A DNA stretch of 64,000 nt from Hyalangium minutum (GTDB lineage: Bacteria > Myxococcota > Myxococcia > Myxococcales > Myxococcaceae). Position 1 is the first letter of the stretch. Every line of letters starts with the position of its first letter. The DNA is taken from the NCBI RefSeq assembly GCF_000737315.1, contig NZ_JMCB01000009.1, positions 124,001-188,000 of the forward strand, in the 5' to 3' direction. The notes under the pieces are model-generated. The model was given only the letters and a program-made list of their open reading frames with translations, did not search any database and was not told where the DNA came from. Positions 4,691 to 35,601 of the stretch are shown here, in pieces. The position numbers were made by a program, and so were the translations under genes.

Positions 4691-5581
4691 ATGAACCTCC
4701 TGACCCGCTTGAAGAAGAGCGTGCGGCATCGCACCGCGTACAAGATCTCGGATCCCCTCTCCCGTCTGTTGGGTGCCGCGGGCTTCGGACTGTATGGGGC
4801 CGGCCCCCAGCTCAAGGATGCGGGCCCGGTGCGCCGGGCGGGCCTCCCTCTGGAGCAGCTCCCGTTCGATCTCGCGGACGTGCGCCAGTTCTGGAACGAG
4901 CTCTCGGCCCGCAGCGAGGCGCTGAACCAGTGGTGCCAGAAGCAGCCCCTCTGGGAAAAGATCCCCCAGTATTACTTCACCTGGAAGCACCTGGAGCCCC
5001 TGCTCACCCGCGAGGACTCGGTCTACGTCGACATCGCCTCCACCCAGAACAGCCCCTACTTCGAGGTGCTGCGGCTGCTGGCGAAGACGCGCAAGCTCTA
5101 CCGGCAGGATCTCGTCTTCCCAGCGGGCGTTCACGGGGATCGGATCGGGGGCTCGGCTGCCGAGCTCCCGCTGGACGCGAGCTCGGTGGATGCCATGACG
5201 CTGCACTGCTCCTTCGAGCACTTCGAGGGAGACGCCGACACGGGCTTCATCCGCGAGGTGGGCCGCGTCCTGCGGCCCGGTGGCCGGGTGTGTCTCGTCC
5301 CGCTGTACCTGGGCGAGTATGCCTTCATCCACAGCGATCCCGCCTGGGCCTATGGCCTCAAGCCGGATCGCGGCACCCCGCTCCACCTCTTCCCTCGCTG
5401 GGGCGAGCGGCATGGCCGCTTCTACAGCGTCGACACCTTCCGCGAGCGCGTCTTCGCTCCCGCGCTCGCCGCGGGGCTCACGGCCAAGGTGGTGCACTTC
5501 CCCAACATCTTGGACCTGAGCCCCACCTGCTACACCCATTTCGGGCTCATCCTGGATAAGCTGAATACACAGAAAATGTGA
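4691..5581 (+). CDS. Class I SAM-dependent methyltransferase
   Basis: GSAAELPLDASSVDAMTLHCSFEHF and REVGRVLRPGG motifs; start ATG 4691. Confidence 0.75.
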   Translation: MNLLTRLKKSVRHRTAYKISDPLSRLLGAAGFGLYGAGPQLKDAGPVRRAGLPLEQLPFDLADVRQFWNELSARSEALNQWCQKQPLWEKIPQYYFTWKHLEPLLTREDSVYVDIASTQNSPYFEVLRLLAKTRKLYRQDLVFPAGVHGDRIGGSAAELPLDASSVDAMTLHCSFEHFEGDADTGFIREVGRVLRPGGRVCLVPLYLGEYAFIHSDPAWAYGLKPDRGTPLHLFPRWGERHGRFYSVDTFRERVFAPALAAGLTAKVVHFPNILDLSPTCYTHFGLILDKLNTQKM

Positions 5582-30845: not shown

Positions 30846-32426
30846 TCATTGTCCCGAACCGTCTGGCTTGACCGGATCAGAGGTGGGCTCGCGCTCGGTT
30901 GGGAAGATGGGCGCGTAGCAGGCTTGCTTAAACACAACTCCACTCTTCACGACCCTGCAATTCTCCAGGTCTCCGACTTCGACCTTCAGCCAGCACCCGC
31001 CATTGAGCGCCACCAGCCCTTTGCGGCAGTTGCCATTCCCATCCGGCTTCAACTGACCCTGCAACGGCTTGGGCGGAGCCTCCAACGCAATCCCCCTCCC
31101 TGAAGGGGCCTGCACCGTGGATTGAGAGGAGGTCGTTGCCGTGTCCCCCACATAAGTGACTCCCCCATCCTGACTCTCGGCAGCAGACCGCTCCACCATC
31201 CGGGGCTCGTCATCAGTGATCACCGGCTGCCTGTCCCGTGACCACAACAACACGCCCCCGGTCACGAGGGCTGCCAACCCGAGAAGCCCTGACACCACCC
31301 GTCTTTGCAGCTCACTGCGCGGCACTCTCCAAGTGGGCGCCTTCGGCTGCTGACGACATTGATTCTCCCTCCGAGCAGCGTCCGCCTCGAGTGCCTCGCG
31401 GACTGTGTCCCGGTTCCTCCGCCGTAAGCTGCGGCCTGATTTCTCGGCGCCGGGCAGCCCCTCACGCGACCACTCCGCGCGCGGCAGCGTTTCCCACTCG
31501 AAGAGGTTCTCGTGCGCTGTGGCGCGGGTCTGCTCGGCGCCCTGCTCCAGTTGCTCGGCCAGCTCCTTCGCCGTACCACGCGCCTCCGGCTTCAACGACA
31601 GCATCCGCCGAATGACGGCATCCAGTTCGGGCCCCACCTGAGGGTTCATCTCCTGCGGCGGCCGAGGCCCACTGCTCCCAGGCCGCCAGCACTTGCCTTC
31701 TTCCATGCTCGCATCCGTGAACGGCGGGTACTCGTCCGTCACCAACCGATAGGCCATCACACCCAAAGCGAACACATCGTCCGCTGGCCCCGCAACATAT
31801 CGCTCGTGCAAGTACCTTCCCAAGAGCCGGCCCTGTGCCCACGCCTCGGGACTGCGGTAAGCCGGAGTCCCCGGAGGTAGCACCGAGGACGTCAGCCGCT
31901 CCGCCCCTTCATAGTCACCCGCTCCGAAGTCCATCAGGAAGAGCCATTCATCCACCCGCCTGACCAAGACGTTGTCGCCCTTGACGTCCCGGTGCACTCC
32001 GCCCGCTTCATGGGTGGCCTGCAACGCCCGGGCAGCCTGAGCCAGCAGCCTGAGCACCGTGTGTTGACTCGGATTGCGCCGCGCGGCCCACCTGTACAGC
32101 GGCTCGCCTTCGATGCACTCCATCACCACGTATGGGTAGCAGAAGCCGTTCGGGTGCCTCCACACACCGCTGTCCAGCAAGCGCGGCACGCTGGAGTGGC
32201 GAGTCCGTCTCAGCAGCTCCGCTTCGCGCTGGAAGCGTGGATCCCTCGGGTGGAGCGCCATCTTGAGCGCCGCCTCCCCTGCGGCCTCGGCCCCCTGCCT
32301 CACGGCGCGGTAGACAGCGCCGTACACACCCACTCCTTGGCCCCCCTTCAAGCGCCAGGGCCCCACCTTTGTCCCGTATGGCAGGCTCCTCACATCCACA
32401 GCCTGATCGAGACTCGGCGCATCCAC
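30846..32426 (-). CDS. Ser/Thr protein kinase, membrane-anchored, with a Cys-rich C-terminus
   Basis: GVGVYG, ALK, HRDVKGDN, DFG, GTPAYRSPE; TM segment VVSGLLGLAALVTGGVLLW. Start probably GTG 32426 after AGGAG (ORF is open to 32504). Confidence 0.9.
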   Translation of the reverse strand: MDAPSLDQAVDVRSLPYGTKVGPWRLKGGQGVGVYGAVYRAVRQGAEAAGEAALKMALHPRDPRFQREAELLRRTRHSSVPRLLDSGVWRHPNGFCYPYVVMECIEGEPLYRWAARRNPSQHTVLRLLAQAARALQATHEAGGVHRDVKGDNVLVRRVDEWLFLMDFGAGDYEGAERLTSSVLPPGTPAYRSPEAWAQGRLLGRYLHERYVAGPADDVFALGVMAYRLVTDEYPPFTDASMEEGKCWRPGSSGPRPPQEMNPQVGPELDAVIRRMLSLKPEARGTAKELAEQLEQGAEQTRATAHENLFEWETLPRAEWSREGLPGAEKSGRSLRRRNRDTVREALEADAARRENQCRQQPKAPTWRVPRSELQRRVVSGLLGLAALVTGGVLLWSRDRQPVITDDEPRMVERSAAESQDGGVTYVGDTATTSSQSTVQAPSGRGIALEAPPKPLQGQLKPDGNGNCRKGLVALNGGCWLKVEVGDLENCRVVKSGVVFKQACYAPIFPTEREPTSDPVKPDGSGQ

Positions 32427-32572
32427 GATCCGCTCCTGCGGCCAGTATCTACCGCCGTTCGTCAGGCGCAAGCCTACCTCATGGGTCGTCTGACCGGCAT
32501 ACAACTCGAACCTCCCGAGTGACAGTTCCGCTCACGGGTACCCACTGGGAGGGCGGATCGAAATATGAGCGA

Positions 32573-32880
32573 GCGGCCAAGACTCACCGGTGAGCCCTGA
32601 GAGCCGGAGGTCCCAGGGAAAATCCCAGGTGGCCAAAGCTCACCGGTAAGCCCAGAGGACCGGACACATAGGGAGAGAACCTACAGGCTGCCAAGGCTCA
32701 CCAGTGAGCCATGACGGCCAGACGCCCGGGAGAAACCCCGGCTGCCAAGGCTCACCAGTGAGCCATGACGGCCAGACACCCGGGAGAGGCCCCCGGCTGC
32801 CAAGGCTCACCAGTGAGCCATGACGGCCAGACGCCCGGGAGAAACCCCGGCTGCCAAGGCTCACCAGTGAGCCATGACGA
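32573..32880. repeat. Tandem array of six 54-58-bp palindromic units
   Basis: Core GGCTCACCAGTGAGCC (or CCGG variant) starts at 32581, 32637, 32695, 32749, 32804 and 32858. Units 3-5 are near-identical; units 1-2 are degenerate. Confidence 0.92.
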
Positions 32881-32991
32881 CCGGTAATTCCTCGGCGACG
32901 GGCGCACCGGGCACCGTCCGCTGGGGTTCCTGGCGCCGAAACTGGTCTGACAAGTAGACCACCGGGCGCAGAACGCGCCGCCGGGACACCC

Positions 32992-35601
32992 TTAGCGGGA
33001 CGCAGAAGCCGGTGGGCTAAGCACCTTCATGGTGCCCTTCGTCACACCGAATTGCTCGTGCACGGCCGCGCGGCGCACAGCCTCGGCAGGCGACAGACGT
33101 CCCGCGAGCAGCTCCTGGTACGCGGACAGCACCCGCGTCGCCTCCTCCTGCGTCTCCCGGACGAACTCCACCCGGAAGCGGCGCACCCCGTGTTCCAGCA
33201 GCCGTGGCACGAGCGACGCCGCGCTCTGGGCCTGCGCGTTGAATACCGTGTTACGGCACCCCACGTCCACGATCACCGGGTGATCCAGCCCCAGGCGATC
33301 CTTCAGAGAGATCTGGTGCTTCTCACACGGCCGGCCACAGGTCCGGAAGTCGCGCCCGTTGGACAGCGTGTGCGAGTACACGCAATGCTCCGTGTGGAAC
33401 GTCGCGATGTGGTGGTGCAGCGCCACCGCGAGCCGGTGCGCTGGCACATGCTCCAGCAGCGAGAAGAGCTGGGTCGCGTCCAGATCGTGCGAACACGTCA
33501 GCGTGTCCAGCCCCAGCCCCAGCAGGTACGCCGCCGTCACCGAGTTCGTCACGTTGAGAGAGAAGTCTCCATGCAGCACCGGGCGCGGCTGGCCCGCAGG
33601 CCGCTCCAGGAAGTGCATCATCGCGCCCCAGTGGCGCACCAGCACCGCATCCGGACGCAGCCGGTCGATGCGCTGGTCGTAGCCCTCCTCGCCCGGCTTC
33701 TGCACTCGCACCGTCGCGATCGTGACGCGCAGCCCCGCAGCCCGGGCCCGCTCCACCGCCCGCTGCAGGCCCACCATCTCCATCCAGTCCAGCTCGACCT
33801 CGCGCAGCCCCGCCGCGATCACAGCCTCCAACTGCGCGTCGTTGCGGCACAGGGGCAGCAACCGCGCGGGCTCCTCCATGGGCCCCGAGGCCACACGCCC
33901 TACGTGCGAGGCCCGCACCGCGTCGAGCACCGGCGTCTCCGCCACCGTCCGCTTGTAGCCCTTCTCCACCGCTGCCGTGAGCTCCGTCACCAGTTGCCGC
34001 CGCAGCGCCTTGAGCTCGGAGACAGGCAGGTGCAGCCCCGGCGCCAGCGCCGAGCAGTCCAGTCGCGCCAGCCGGAACGGCGTCCCTCCGAAGGCTCCCA
34101 GCTTGTCTCGCAGCAGCGCCTCGTCCATGCCGCCGCCTCGCGCGGGGGCCAGCGGCGCCGGGCTGGCCGCGGAGGCCTCGTGTCCCCACGCGCTGGCGTC
34201 AATCCGGAGCGGACTCCCCTCTGCCCCCGAGATCTTCAGCTCGAGCGGGACACGGCCCTCGGGCTCACCCTGGGCGATCAGGCTCTCCACCCGGCGCGCC
34301 AGAGCGGGATCACTGTTGAGCCACACCCGCTGGCCTACCGCCACGCGCCCCAGATCCGGCCCCGGGTTGCCGAAGCCCAGCACCCACCCTTCGCCTCGGC
34401 GCTCCACGCGGAAGATGGGGCCACCGGGCTCGTTCTTGTCCTCAGGCCTGCCCGCATCGAACACCACGCCCATGCCTGGACGAGGCTCCACCGCATCAGG
34501 AGTGGGCTCTCCCTTCAACGGAGAAGACACGTGCCCCGCCGGGCTCTCCGGGCGCTCCTCGCCCAAGCCCAGCGCTCCCGTCCACGGGCGCTCGTCGGGG
34601 ACGATCACCACTTCCTTGCCAGAGAGGGAGCGCACGCGCCCGAGGTACACACCGCGGTGCTTCGGGAAGCGGCCCTCGACGAGCGTCTGGTGATCCGAGC
34701 CCGCCAGGAAGCCGTTCGAGAAGCCACGGCTGTACGTGAGCGACATGTCCGCCAGGTCCCGCTTGAGCTGGGCCTCATCCGGCTTCCCCGCGACGCACCC
34801 CTCCACCCACCGCTTGTAGCCCTGCACCGTCGAGGAGACGTAGGCGGGCCCCTTGAGCCGGCCCTCGATCTTCAACCCGTGCACGCCAATGCCCACCAGC
34901 TCGGGCACTGCGTAGACACCCGCCAGATCCTTGGGGCTGAGCAGGTACTTCACCTCGCCCAGCTCTCGCGTCTGGCCATCGACGACGAGATCGTACGGCA
35001 GGCGGCAGGACTGCGCGCACTGGCCTCGGTTGGCGGAACGCCCACCCCAGGCCTCACTCGTCAGGCATTGCCCGCTCCAAGACATGCAGAGCGCGCCGTG
35101 GATGAAGACCTCCAGCTCGACATCCGTCTGCCCCGCCAGCTTGCGGATCTCCGCGACGGACAGCTCCCGAGGCACCACCACCCGGCAGATCCCCAGCCCC
35201 TGCGCGAAGCGCACGCCCTCCGCGCTGGAGATCGTCATCTGCGTGGAGGCGTGCAGTTCCAGTTGAGGGCAGATCGCCCGGGCCAGCAGCGCCACAGCGG
35301 GATCCTGCAGAATCAGCGCGTCCACGCCCGCCGCAGCGGCCCCGCGAAGCAGTTGCTCGAGGATCGGTAGCTCGGGCTCGAAGACGAGCGTGTTGAGCGT
35401 CAGGTAGGCCCGCGCTCCCGCCCGGTGGATGAGGGCCATCGTCTCGGGGAGGCGGGCGAGCGAGAAGTTCTCGGCGCGGGCGCGGGCATTGAAGCCCTCG
35501 TCGAGCCCAAAGTAGACAGCGTCCGCTCCGCTGGCGAGCGCGGCCTGGAGGGACTCCAGATCCCCCGCGGGAGCAAGGATTTCGGGGCGGCGGGCAGGCA
35601 T
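32992..35601 (-). CDS. rlhA: Peptidase U32 family protein with DUF3656, RlhA-like 23S rRNA hydroxylase
   Basis: EILAPAG, GADAVYFG, HASTQ, EVFIHGALCMSWSGQC...SANRGQCAQSCR, LSPKDL, LKIEGR. Confidence 0.8.
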   Translation of the reverse strand: MPARRPEILAPAGDLESLQAALASGADAVYFGLDEGFNARARAENFSLARLPETMALIHRAGARAYLTLNTLVFEPELPILEQLLRGAAAAGVDALILQDPAVALLARAICPQLELHASTQMTISSAEGVRFAQGLGICRVVVPRELSVAEIRKLAGQTDVELEVFIHGALCMSWSGQCLTSEAWGGRSANRGQCAQSCRLPYDLVVDGQTRELGEVKYLLSPKDLAGVYAVPELVGIGVHGLKIEGRLKGPAYVSSTVQGYKRWVEGCVAGKPDEAQLKRDLADMSLTYSRGFSNGFLAGSDHQTLVEGRFPKHRGVYLGRVRSLSGKEVVIVPDERPWTGALGLGEERPESPAGHVSSPLKGEPTPDAVEPRPGMGVVFDAGRPEDKNEPGGPIFRVERRGEGWVLGFGNPGPDLGRVAVGQRVWLNSDPALARRVESLIAQGEPEGRVPLELKISGAEGSPLRIDASAWGHEASAASPAPLAPARGGGMDEALLRDKLGAFGGTPFRLARLDCSALAPGLHLPVSELKALRRQLVTELTAAVEKGYKRTVAETPVLDAVRASHVGRVASGPMEEPARLLPLCRNDAQLEAVIAAGLREVELDWMEMVGLQRAVERARAAGLRVTIATVRVQKPGEEGYDQRIDRLRPDAVLVRHWGAMMHFLERPAGQPRPVLHGDFSLNVTNSVTAAYLLGLGLDTLTCSHDLDATQLFSLLEHVPAHRLAVALHHHIATFHTEHCVYSHTLSNGRDFRTCGRPCEKHQISLKDRLGLDHPVIVDVGCRNTVFNAQAQSAASLVPRLLEHGVRRFRVEFVRETQEEATRVLSAYQELLAGRLSPAEAVRRAAVHEQFGVTKGTMKVLSPPASASR

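What the first reader, a model, noticed from the sequence alone, without database searches (positions are those of the whole stretch)
32573..32880. Six-unit tandem array of two-hairpin modules in the leader of a Ser/Thr kinase
Seen: units of 56, 58, 54, 55 and 54 bp plus a partial sixth. Each has a long imperfect hairpin GGCTG-C-CA-A-GGCTCAC-(CA/CG)-GTGAGCC-A-TG-A-CGGCC and a second short stem with a purine-rich loop. The second stem changes sequence but keeps pairing (GGGA/TCCC, TAGG/CCTA, CCGGG/CCCGG). Degeneration is polar, with the kinase-proximal units most diverged. Inter-core segments resemble each other, so this is not CRISPR, and no cas gene is present. Known: type III toxin-antitoxin RNAs, BIME/REP clusters and other guide arrays are tandem structured repeats next to an effector gene. 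Inference: a structured ncRNA array or multi-operator controlling the kinase, possibly an undescribed repeat-kinase system.
Basis: partly seen in the sequence, partly recalled or inferred. Interest (0 to 1): 0.75.

Follow-up and report, generated by a model that had tools for sequence, protein, structure and literature searches.

The report
Tandem hairpin repeat upstream of kinase
The six-unit hairpin array is real, but it is a recently acquired copy of a Hyalangium-specific modular repeat whose older home is in front of a sigma-54 activator gene, so it is not a kinase-specific system and its function is still unproven.

Summary
The array at window 32563-32883 is confirmed: six direct units spaced 54-58 bp, each built on a 34-nt imperfect hairpin. 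The window is Hyalangium minutum DSM 14724. The array lies between a U32 peptidase gene and a Ser/Thr kinase gene, both on the minus strand.

- Four orthologous U32-kinase loci have a 190-bp spacer with no array.
- Two kinase paralogues lack it.
- H. minutum carries a second, paralogous array upstream of a double-FHA sigma-54 activator gene. Its terminal unit plus tail is 85% identical to the window's.
- That activator locus also carries arrays in H. versicolor (two loci) and in at least two metagenomic relatives.

Across eight arrays the main hairpin is kept by compensatory changes: 83.5% of cells are paired against 71.5% in shuffles, 0/500 reaching the observed value. G·U pairs favour the strand of the downstream gene. 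The second short hairpin is no better than chance.

Best reading: a lineage-restricted modular element (head, tandem hairpin units, tail), copied into the kinase leader and then expanded. It is probably transcribed as a structured 5' leader. A neutral minisatellite remains a serious rival. No Rfam, CRISPR or type III TA match.

The parts
32992..35601 (-). Upstream gene: 869-aa U32 peptidase (Peptidase_U32 + DUF3656). Its stop codon lies 107 nt before the array in the direction of transcription.
   Evidence: ORF. Gene call and Pfam. The last 100 residues are identical in the empty-site loci L045/L046 and nearly so in L047.
32944..32960 (-). Conserved small hairpin or inverted repeat, GGTCTACTTGTCAGACC, just after the U32 stop. 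It is native to the spacer and not part of the inserted element.
   Evidence: Present in all array-less orthologous spacers L045-L048. Also present in inverted orientation upstream of the paralogous kinase in L008 (D3, 21).
32520..32912 (-). Approximate extent of the DNA that H. minutum has and the array-less orthologous spacers lack: the insert, made of head, array, tail and about 45 nt of unknown origin.
   Evidence: Alignments of the window spacer with empty sites L045, L047 and L048. The boundaries are approximate because the flanks have diverged.
32884..32921 (-). 'Head' of the element: GCGGACGGTGCCCGGTGCGCCCGTCGCCGAGGAATTAC. It is homologous to the sequence preceding the arrays at the sigma-54 activator loci and begins at the right half of their GTCCGCG..CGCGGAC palindrome.
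   Evidence: A 12/12 exact match GCGGACGGTGCC plus about 55 nt of alignable flank with L032; similar in L022 and L053.
32663..32883 (-). Four gene-distal units: U6 32830-32883, U5 32775-32829, U4 32721-32774, U3 32663-32720. They are near-identical (83-96%). Hairpin GGCCGTCATGGCTCAC-TG-GTGAGCCTTGGCAGCC plus a 20-24-nt linker. This is a recently amplified variant.
32607..32662 (-). Unit U2, diverged, with a degenerate hairpin (GGTCCTCTGGGCTTAC-CG-GTGAGCTTTGGCCACC).
   Evidence: In the close relative L005 it carries both pair-breaking and pair-restoring changes.
32563..32606 (-). Terminal half-unit U1 (hairpin only) plus 'tail' CTCGCTCATAT.
   Evidence: 85% identical to the terminal unit plus tail of the H. 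minutum activator-locus array L049, and 74% to that of L022.
32471..32487 (-). Conserved kinase-family leader motif GACCCATGAGGTAGGCT. It is native to the spacer, not part of the repeat element, and lies downstream of the insert.
   Evidence: Present in orthologues L005 and L045-L048 and in paralogues L006 and L008. It is non-coding in L008, where an in-frame TGA occurs.
30846..32471 (-). Downstream gene: Ser/Thr protein kinase, 541 aa as called. The start is more probably the GTG at 32426 (526 aa), as in its homologues.
   Evidence: Homologue starts align with GTGGATGCGCC.

Best explanation
**What it is (shown).** The array is one copy of a small family of modular tandem-hairpin repeats, found so far only in Hyalangium-like myxobacteria. 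Each element has a 40-55-nt head, n direct units of 54-64 nt built around a 12-16-bp imperfect hairpin, a terminal half-unit, and a short tail (..CTCGC..CATAT).

**Where it came from (shown).**
- The family's older home is the 5' region of a double-FHA sigma-54 enhancer-binding-protein gene. It is present there in H. minutum itself, at two H. versicolor loci and in at least two metagenomic relatives (L022, L032). A further contig, L051, breaks 57 nt upstream of the same gene with a matching hairpin arm at its end.
- The window's copy was added, head to tail, into the U32-peptidase/kinase spacer in the H. minutum lineage.
- It then grew at its gene-distal end by duplication of a variant unit.

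**How it works (inferred).**
- The hairpin is maintained by compensatory substitutions and pairs better on the strand of the downstream gene.
- At the activator loci the last hairpin ends only 25-48 nt before the start codon. That leaves too little room for a promoter, so at least part of the array must be transcribed or must overlap the promoter.
- I therefore think the array is transcribed in the sense direction as a structured 5' leader. Here it would also receive any read-through from the U32 gene.
- Such a leader would tune expression after transcription starts, through mRNA stability, processing or translation initiation, with unit number as an evolvable dial.

It is not a kinase-specific system, a toxin-antitoxin pair or a CRISPR array.
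For: - **Array and hairpins are real:**
- **Source:** H. minutum GCA_000737315.1, contig JMCB01000009.
- **Lineage-specific gain:**
  - Orthologous loci L045-L048 have a near-identical U32 C-terminus (last 100 residues identical in L045/L046; L048 holds only the last bases of the gene).
  - Their kinases are 74-76% identical to the window's.
  - Where the contig reaches (L045-L047) they have the same downstream PDH/CM_2 gene.
  - They have a 190-bp spacer and no array.
  - The closest relative, L005 (kinase 92% identical), has the array.
- **Second array in the same genome:**
  - L049 4776-4975 has four units of about 56 nt.
  - It ends 25 nt before the ATG of the FHA-FHA-sigma54 activator P0191.
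- **Whole-array paralogy:**
  - Terminal unit plus tail is 85% identical between the two arrays.
  - Internal units are 74-84% identical (80-84% for U4-U6).
  - The window's own terminal and internal units are only 59-65% identical.
  - The head flank is shared with L032, L022 and L053.
- **Arrays at the same activator locus in other lineages:** L022 and L032. H. versicolor L053 is a syntenic orthologue with 4.4 units of 63 nt, and H. versicolor L050 has three units. Their hairpin stems have different sequences.
- **Compensatory evolution, 26 distinct units from 8 arrays:**
  - 83.5% of cells are paired, against 71.5 +/- 1.5% in shuffles (0/500).
  - The covariation score is 0.354 against 0.159 (0/500).
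  - 8 of 14 pairs show double changes, and slid controls pair in 29-48% of cells.
  - RNAalifold independently calls a 9-bp helix with 5 compensated pairs.
- **Strand signal:** 46 G·U cells on the sense strand against 13 A·C cells. The sense strand folds more stably in 9 of 10 arrays.
Against: - There are no transcription data, and no promoter or terminator was detectable.
- The array is dispensable for the kinase in four related organisms. A paralogous activator in H. minutum (L052) has none.
- In L053 the antisense strand folds better, by 30 kcal/mol.
- Units within an array are not independent, so the covariation and G·U counts overstate the number of independent events.
- Within the CTCAC-type units alone, covariation is no better than shuffles.
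- The second hairpin is not significant.
- REP-like selfish palindromes also keep their symmetry without serving the neighbouring gene.
- In L032 the array abuts a 5'-truncated activator gene, so the array can persist beside a broken gene.
Confidence: 0.45

Rival explanations
1. It is a selfish or neutral minisatellite, a BOX/BrickBuilt/MIRU-like modular repeat. It spreads by occasional ectopic copying and expands or contracts by slippage or unequal recombination. Its palindromic units persist because of how the element is copied or recognised, not because they serve the neighbouring gene, and any effect on the kinase is incidental.
For: - Lineage-specific presence at the kinase locus, with empty orthologous sites.
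- Absent from paralogous kinases and from one paralogous activator.
- Found next to four unrelated gene families.
- Near-identical distal units indicate recent amplification, while edge units drift with both pair-breaking and pair-restoring changes in L005.
- The array persists beside a truncated activator gene in L032.
- The head-units-tail layout matches the described BrickBuilt MITE-minisatellite (PMC4596501).
- Contigs of relatives break at or next to the arrays, as expected for repeats (L005, L051 and possibly L050).
Against: - Arrays are retained at the same position and orientation in front of the same activator gene in at least five lineages, although the unit sequence has turned over.
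- The hairpin is kept by compensatory changes.
- Every array whose neighbour is known has the same orientation relative to the downstream gene, with G·U bias on that strand.
- No terminal inverted repeats or target-site duplications could be defined.
- No other copies occur in the 64-kb window or in about 27 kb of other held H. minutum DNA.
Confidence: 0.33
2. It is a DNA-level multi-operator. Each 16-bp palindrome (GGCTCAC-NN-GTGAGCC) binds a dimeric transcription factor. One candidate is the adjacent FHA-sigma54 activator acting on its own gene and, through the copied array, on the kinase, which would link a kinase with a phospho-threonine-reading activator.
For: - The core is a near-perfect palindrome repeated in tandem.
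- The same palindrome type precedes both an FHA-domain activator and a Ser/Thr kinase in one genome.
- A 27-nt array with the same CTCAC-NN-GTGAG core lies next to a perfect sigma-54 promoter, TGGCACctcacTTGCT, in L011.
- Symmetric binding sites would also show paired changes in both arms.
Against: - The activators beside arrays with different palindromes (CTCAC, CTGAC, CGGAC) have the same recognition helix, ARSSLFKRLK, so site and protein do not co-vary.
- The conserved palindromes GTCCGCG-NN-CGCGGAC upstream of the arrays are better candidates for the activator's sites.
- No sigma-54 promoter follows the arrays at the kinase or activator loci.
- Unit periods of 54, 56, 58, 63 and 64 bp do not keep a helical phase.
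- G·U against A·C asymmetry (46:13) is not expected for a double-stranded site.
- A conserved mismatch inside the stem (pair 5/32) is also unexpected for such a site.
Confidence: 0.12
3. It is a repeat-effector system. The array is processed into small RNAs of about 55 nt that neutralise or guide the kinase, in the manner of a type III toxin-antitoxin pair or a guide array.
For: There is only the formal resemblance: structured tandem repeats immediately upstream of a protein gene.
Against: - The downstream protein is an ordinary membrane Ser/Thr kinase from a very large paralogue family (1910 hits at E<=1e-30), not an endoribonuclease.
- Orthologues and paralogues of the kinase lack the array.
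- Homologous arrays precede unrelated genes.
- There is no Rfam match.
Confidence: 0.03

Closest known systems
BrickBuilt MITE-minisatellite of Porphyromonas gingivalis (PMC4596501), and the modular BOX elements of Streptococcus pneumoniae (boxA-boxB(n)-boxC; from my own knowledge)
   Same: - Strictly intergenic.
- Modular layout: a non-repeated leader, a variable number of direct tandem units, and a non-repeated tail.
- Several copies per genome and a narrow host range.
- Located close to gene starts, with potential to affect transcription.
   Different: - The units here are 54-64 nt, against 23 nt in BrickBuilt.
- Each unit is built on a long imperfect hairpin.
- Only two copies are known so far in H. 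minutum, against 19 for BrickBuilt.
- No terminal inverted repeats or target duplications could be defined.
- Orientation relative to the downstream gene is constant.
- One locus (the activator) keeps an array across species.
MIRU / VNTR minisatellites of mycobacteria (from my own knowledge)
   Same: - Direct tandem repeats of 40-100 bp.
- Located in spacers between co-oriented genes.
- Present at several loci.
- Unit number is expected to vary, and the arrays are homogenised within a locus.
   Different: - MIRUs often carry short ORFs that couple translation of the flanking genes. Here the 54/55/58-nt periods break any frame, and the spurious ORF has no homologues.
- MIRUs are not hairpin-based.
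REP / BIME clusters of enterobacteria and pseudomonads (from my own knowledge)
   Same: - Imperfect GC-rich palindromes of about 35 nt with a conserved internal mismatch.
- Clustered and extragenic.
- The family sequence turns over between species while the palindrome is kept.
   Different: - All units are direct, not alternating in orientation.
- The arrays lie 5' of genes rather than 3'.
- Copy number appears low.
- No RAYT association was examined.
- Units carry a 20-30-nt linker as part of the repeat.
Type III toxin-antitoxin RNA arrays (ToxI/ToxN; from my own knowledge)
   Same: Tandem direct repeats of a structured unit immediately upstream of a protein-coding gene on the same strand.
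   Different: - The downstream gene is a Pkinase-domain protein, not a ToxN/AbiQ-type endoribonuclease.
- The array and the gene are not inherited together.
- Units are 54-58 nt, not about 36 nt.

Membership tests
CRISPR array | Conserved repeats separated by unique, unrelated spacers | tested here: not met
   The 20-24-nt segments between hairpins are homologous to each other. Whole units U3-U6 are 83-96% identical.
CRISPR array | cas genes nearby | not tested
   No systematic cas scan of the 64-kb window was run. The genes called within 10 kb either side are ordinary metabolic and regulatory genes.
Type III toxin-antitoxin (ToxIN-like) | The gene downstream of the repeats encodes a ToxN/AbiQ/CptN-type endoribonuclease toxin | tested here: not met
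   The downstream protein matches Pkinase (E = 3e-25) and PK_Tyr_Ser-Thr. It has no toxin family match.
Type III toxin-antitoxin (ToxIN-like) | Repeat array and effector gene are inherited as a unit | tested here: not met
   Four orthologous kinase loci and two paralogues lack the array.
REP / BIME | Imperfect palindrome of 20-40 nt that can form a hairpin | tested here: met
   A 34-nt hairpin with 14/16 pairs and a conserved mismatch at pair 5/32.
REP / BIME | Tens to hundreds of dispersed copies per genome | tested here: inconclusive
   - Two loci are known in H. minutum (window, L049).
- No others occur in the 64-kb window plus about 27 kb of other held H. minutum DNA.
- The whole-genome scan did not cover H. 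minutum: one search missed L049 although L049 matches the pattern.
REP / BIME | Neighbouring REPs alternate in orientation within a cluster | tested here: not met
   All six units are direct. nhmmer scores are 30-39 bits on one strand and 11-26 bits on the other for every unit.
REP / BIME | Association with a RAYT (REP-associated tyrosine transposase) in the genome | not tested
   The genome outside the fetched loci could not be searched.
Modular MITE-minisatellite (BrickBuilt / BOX type) | Conserved non-repeated leader and tail flanking a variable number of tandem units | tested here: met
   The head is shared with L032, L022 and L053, including a 12/12 exact match GCGGACGGTGCC. The tail GGCCNCTCGC..CATAT is shared with L049 and L022. 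Unit numbers range from 3 to 6.
Modular MITE-minisatellite (BrickBuilt / BOX type) | Terminal inverted repeats and target-site duplication | tested here: inconclusive
   In L049, GCGGAC and GTCCGC bracket the array, but this is not consistent in the window, L022, L032 or L053. The empty sites are too diverged to read a target duplication.
Modular MITE-minisatellite (BrickBuilt / BOX type) | Multiple copies at unrelated intergenic sites in one genome | tested here: met
   Two loci in H. minutum (window, L049). At least four arrays occur in metagenome 3300031825 (L011, L024, L028, L032), though these may not all be from one organism.
MIRU-type VNTR | Tandem 40-100-bp direct repeats in spacers between co-oriented genes | tested here: met
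   54-58-bp units between two minus-strand genes.
MIRU-type VNTR | Unit-number polymorphism between strains | not testable with these tools
   The only close relative (L005) is a short-read contig that breaks inside the array.
Sigma-54 enhancer (UAS) array | Palindromic activator sites upstream of a -24/-12 (GG-N10-GC) promoter | tested here: not met
   No sigma-54 promoter match lies between any array and the kinase or activator start. The only match is at L011, beside a 27-nt array.
Sigma-54 enhancer (UAS) array | The site sequence tracks the DNA-binding helix of the cognate activator | tested here: not met
   The recognition helix ARSSLFKRLK is identical in activators beside CTCAC-, CTGAC- and CGGAC-type arrays.
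Any curated RNA family (Rfam 15) | Covariance-model match at the gathering score | tested here: not met
   No match in the window or in six related loci. Only sub-threshold miRNA-like hits appeared, and these reflect generic long hairpins.

The most novel reading that the evidence does not exclude
The arrays are a new class of fast-evolving cis-regulatory leader made of tandem hairpin modules. Unit number and stem sequence would tune expression of signalling genes. The copy in front of the kinase would have placed a Ser/Thr kinase and a phospho-threonine-reading FHA sigma-54 activator under the same leader logic in H. minutum, through a shared RNA-binding or processing factor. That would be a regulatory link created by copying a repeat module.
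Probability: 0.2. Interest if true: 0.7.

Novelty: new variant of a known kind. Interest (0 to 1): 0.42.

Why it matters
If the arrays are only a minisatellite, the value is practical:
- They break short-read assemblies of Hyalangium genomes.
- They would make good strain-typing markers.
- The finding removes a false "repeat-kinase system" lead.

If they are functional leaders, they would show how a structured tandem module is kept in front of one regulatory gene for a long time while its sequence turns over. They would also show how copying that module to a second gene can rewire a signalling network. Either way, the family is undescribed in Rfam and in the searchable literature. It is small enough to test directly in a cultivable type strain, DSM 14724.

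Tried and rejected
1. **Genome-collection scan** for GCCAARRCTCACCRGTRAGCC. It returned three single chance hits. I first read this as "not dispersed", then withdrew that. The H. minutum array L049 matches the pattern but was not reported, so the H. minutum genome is absent or masked in that collection. The pattern would also miss the CTGTGG, CTGAC and CGGAC variants.
2. **Spurious-ORF search.** I searched the protein database with the 74-aa ORF across the array, hoping to find other arrays through miscalled ORFs. No hits.
3. **Rfam** at gathering and at E<=10. Only sub-threshold miRNA-like matches.
4. **Plasmid and phage collections.** No match. The viral contig scan gave only unrelated repeats.
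5. **Sigma-70 promoter and intrinsic terminator scan** of 32300-33200. Nothing found.
6. **Sigma-54 promoter scan** next to all arrays. Only L011 matched.
7. **CsrA-sponge idea** (GGA in loops). GGA motifs appear only on the antisense strand of some arrays and are inconsistent across arrays. Rejected by inspection.
8. **A consistent "wobble strand" from the CACAGC/CATGGC arm variants.** Rejected after flank homology showed that L032 carries the mismatched combination on the sense strand. The overall G·U bias remains.
9. **The second hairpin as a conserved structure.** Not better than shuffles.
10. **Literature searches** for myxobacterial REP, MITE or tandem hairpin repeats. Nothing specific was found.
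Full report
**1. The observation**

The array is real. Both repeat finders report it.
- The repeat finder gives six direct copies with start-to-start spacing of 56, 58, 54, 55 and 54 bp.
- TRF gives period 54, 3.6 copies, 94% matches, and period 109, score 400. No other repeat in the 64-kb window scores above 57.

Each unit carries a 16+2+16-nt imperfect hairpin with 14 of 16 positions paired. The 16-nt core GGCTCACCRGTGAGCC gives 13 hits with up to 2 mismatches, against 0.49 expected by chance; 12 are the six array units read on both strands and one lies at 34307 in the U32 gene. The region folds much better than dinucleotide shuffles, with z = -8.4 on the minus strand and -5.6 on the plus strand.

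The array lies between two minus-strand genes:
- It is 107 nt downstream of the stop codon of an 869-aa U32 peptidase gene (32992-35601).
- It is 100 nt upstream of the called TTG start of a Ser/Thr kinase (32471), or about 145 nt upstream of the GTG at 32426 that matches the start of homologues.

Read in the direction of those genes, the order is: head, U6, U5, U4, U3, U2, U1, tail, kinase.

**2. Source and orthologous loci**

The window is Hyalangium minutum DSM 14724, assembly GCA_000737315.1, contig JMCB01000009. The kinase belongs to a very large paralogue family, with 1910 proteins at E<=1e-30.

| Locus | Relation to the window's kinase | Array upstream? |
|---|---|---|
| L005 | 92% identical, same downstream genes | Yes; the contig starts inside the array and keeps the three kinase-proximal units |
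| L045, L046, L047, L048 | 74-76% identical; U32 C-terminus near-identical (last 100 residues identical in L045/L046); same downstream PDH/CM_2 gene where the contig reaches (L045-L047) | No; spacer of only about 190 bp |
| L006/L007, L008 (H. minutum) | Paralogues | No |

All of the orthologous spacers keep two native elements:
- a small hairpin, GGTCTnCTTGTCAGACC, just after the U32 stop;
- a leader motif, GACC(C/T)(A/G)TGAGGTAGG, about 50 nt before the kinase start.

In H. minutum about 390 bp (roughly window 32520-32912) lie between these two elements and replace about 45 nt. The array is therefore a gain in the H. minutum lineage, not a conserved feature of the kinase.

**3. Related arrays elsewhere**

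A metagenome scan for two CTCACYGGTGAG cores 36-52 nt apart returned 33 loci. Most are unrelated repeats that only share the 12-mer. Three are clearly homologous over the whole unit:
- L022: period 63-64.
- L032: period 63.
- L024: period 54.

Two further loci, L011 and L028, carry a 27-nt array with the same core.

Gene context of these arrays:
- L022 and L032 lie directly upstream of a double-FHA sigma-54 activator gene.
- L024 lies upstream of a 296-aa protein with no Pfam family.
- L011 and L028 lie upstream of a homologue of the 247-aa gene that sits divergently next to the activator.

I then searched for the activator's relatives and fetched their loci:
- **H. minutum, L049 (contig JMCB01000040).** It has a second array of four units of about 56 nt at 4776-4975, ending 25 nt before the activator's ATG.
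- **H. versicolor, L053.** This is the syntenic orthologue. It has 4.4 units of 63 nt.
- **H. versicolor, L050.** This is a paralogue of the activator gene. It has three units of about 61-63 nt.
- **L051.** This contig breaks 57 nt before the ATG. It begins with CGTCAGAAGT, which matches the 3' arm of the L053-type hairpin.
- **H. minutum, L052.** A more distant activator paralogue with no array.

This result also corrected an earlier inference. L049 matches the pattern of my genome-collection scan but was not reported. That scan therefore says nothing about copy number in H. minutum.

**4. The kinase array is a head-to-tail paralogue of the activator array**

- The window's terminal unit plus tail is 85% identical to the terminal unit plus tail of L049, and 74% to that of L022.
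- It is only 59-65% identical to the window's own internal units.
- The window's internal units are 74-84% identical to L049's internal units, 80-84% for U4-U6.
- The 38-55 nt before the first hairpin align with the same region in L032, L022 and L053. They include a 12/12 exact match, GCGGACGGTGCC.
- That head starts at the right half of a perfect palindrome, GTCCGCG-NN-CGCGGAC. The palindrome is conserved at all the activator loci but is absent as a whole from the window.

So a segment from the palindrome centre through the array to the tail was copied into the kinase spacer. The four distal units (83-96% identical to each other) share derived changes, CATGG and a TG loop. They look like a later local amplification.

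**5. Is the structure selected?**

*Main hairpin.*
- Within the CTCAC-type units alone, pairing is high (84.6%) but no better than column shuffles.
- Adding the H. versicolor arrays, which were found through protein homology and not through the hairpin, changes the result:

| Measure (26 distinct units, 8 arrays) | Observed | Shuffled controls |
|---|---|---|
| Cells paired | 83.5% | 71.5 +/- 1.5% (0/500 reach observed) |
| Covariation score | 0.354 | 0.159 (0/500) |
| Cells with double changes | 42 | 18.4 (0/500) |
| Pairs with double changes | 8 of 14 | 6.9 +/- 1.0 (127/500) |
| Cells paired with 3' partners slid by 1-3 columns | – | 29-48% |

- The stems run GCTCAC/GTGAGC, TCTCAC/GTGAGA (L024_2), TCTGAC/GTCAGA (L053) and TCGGAC/GTCCGA (L050). 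This is a stepwise compensated series.
- RNAalifold independently predicts a 9-bp helix with five compensated pairs.
- Caveat: units in one array are not independent, so the number of independent events is much smaller than the number of cells.

*Strand.*
- G·U cells on the gene-sense strand outnumber A·C cells 46 to 13. A·C cells would be G·U on the other strand.
- The sense strand folds more stably in 9 of 10 arrays. L053 is a clear exception.

*Second hairpin.* Short stems can be drawn in nearly every linker. Linker folding is not better than shuffles, so I do not count it as evidence.

**6. How it most likely works**

*Shown:*
- The element's anatomy.
- Its paralogy with the activator-locus array.
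- Its gain at the kinase locus.
- Its retention, in one orientation, in front of the activator gene across lineages while the sequence turns over.
- The compensated hairpin.

*Inferred:*
- At the activator loci the last hairpin ends only 25-48 nt before the start codon. A promoter plus a ribosome-binding site cannot fit downstream of the array. At least part of the array must therefore be transcribed or must overlap the promoter.
- Combined with the sense-strand G·U bias, the best-supported model is a structured 5' leader. It would act on mRNA stability, processing or translation initiation, and unit number would vary its strength.
- At the kinase locus it would also face any read-through from the U32 gene.

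I put this model at about 0.45. The identity and history of the element I consider well supported. The mechanism is the weak part.

**7. Rivals**

*Neutral or selfish minisatellite (0.33).* It fits:
- the lineage-specific gain;
- the absence from paralogues;
- the spread to unrelated genes;
- the drift in the edge units;
- the array beside a truncated activator gene in L032.

It fits less well with the long retention and constant orientation at the activator locus.

*DNA multi-operator (0.12).* This is attractive because an FHA activator and a Ser/Thr kinase share the module. The evidence against it is:
- The activators beside CTCAC-, CTGAC- and CGGAC-type arrays have the same recognition helix, ARSSLFKRLK.
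- No sigma-54 promoter follows the arrays at these loci.
- The unit periods do not keep helical phase.
- The G·U asymmetry is unexpected for duplex sites.
- The conserved GTCCGCGATCGCGGAC palindromes are better candidates for the activator's own sites.

*Type III TA-like or guide-array system (0.03).* This is contradicted by the Pkinase effector and by the empty orthologous loci.

**8. Comparison with known systems**

There is no Rfam match and no plasmid or phage match. Nothing specific turned up in the searchable literature.

The closest described things are modular intergenic repeats with a leader, tandem units and a tail:
- BrickBuilt of Porphyromonas gingivalis (PMC4596501).
- Pneumococcal BOX elements, MIRU-type minisatellites and REP/BIME palindromes (these three from my own knowledge).

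This family differs in four ways:
- its long hairpin-based 54-64-nt units;
- its constant sense orientation 5' of genes;
- its apparently low copy number;
- its persistence at one regulatory gene across species.

I class it as a new variant of a known kind.

**9. Verdict**

It is a structured tandem array in a kinase leader, but not a repeat-kinase system. Interest is moderate (0.42). The family is undescribed and has covariation support. Its function is unknown, and a mundane minisatellite reading remains open.

Noticed in passing
window 32944-32960 (minus strand); L008 5835-5853; L045-L048 spacers: A conserved small hairpin or inverted repeat, GGTCTnCTTGTCAGACC, follows the U32 peptidase stop in all orthologous loci. 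It also occurs, in inverted orientation, about 100 nt upstream of the leader motif of a paralogous kinase in H. minutum. It could be a terminator or a shared protein-binding site.
   Followed up: partly
window 32471-32487 (minus strand); L005, L006, L008, L045-L048: The motif GACC(C/T)(A/G)TGAGGTAGG(C/A)T is conserved 45-55 nt upstream of the start in orthologues and paralogues of this kinase family. It is non-coding in L008, where an in-frame TGA occurs. The called TTG start at 32471 overlaps it. The real start is probably the GTG at 32426.
   Followed up: partly
L049 4581-4596 and 4730-4745; also L022, L032, L050, L053: Two copies of a perfect 16-bp palindrome, GTCCGCGATCGCGGAC (centre variable), are conserved upstream of the FHA-sigma54 activator gene across species, unlike the array hairpins. 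They are good candidates for the activator's own binding sites. The window's repeat element begins at the right half of this palindrome.
   Followed up: partly
L011 1425-1537 and 1548-1563: A 4 x 27-nt array with the same CTCAC-CA-GTGAG core lies about 10 nt upstream of a perfect sigma-54 promoter, TGGCACctcacTTGCT. That promoter precedes a lipoprotein/RCC1-repeat gene. The array's better-pairing strand points towards the divergent 247-aa-like gene.
   Followed up: partly
L032 589-790: The array is followed directly by the middle of the activator gene (..ACSPRAELPFIPLN..). About 270 N-terminal codons present in L022 are missing. This is either a deletion next to the array or an assembly artefact.
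   Followed up: no
L005 1, L051 1, L050 1: Contigs of related organisms end inside an array (L005) or just beside one (L051). The L050 contig ends about 300 nt from its array. These repeats probably break short-read assemblies of Hyalangium genomes.
   Followed up: no
L012-L014, L033, L038, L040, L041; L015/L030; L020/L036: Many unrelated metagenomic loci carry clustered or tandem palindromes with a CTCACCGGTGAG core in AT-richer contexts, such as TGCTCACCGGTGAGCA clusters and 24-nt and 32-nt arrays. This is probably a product of the search pattern. It could also be a recurrent operator-like palindrome.
   Followed up: no
L050 2957-7137: Downstream of the H. versicolor activator paralogue lie SIR2_2/VMAP-C, AAA and Peptidase_S8 genes. 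This gene set resembles a defence-type cluster.
   Followed up: no
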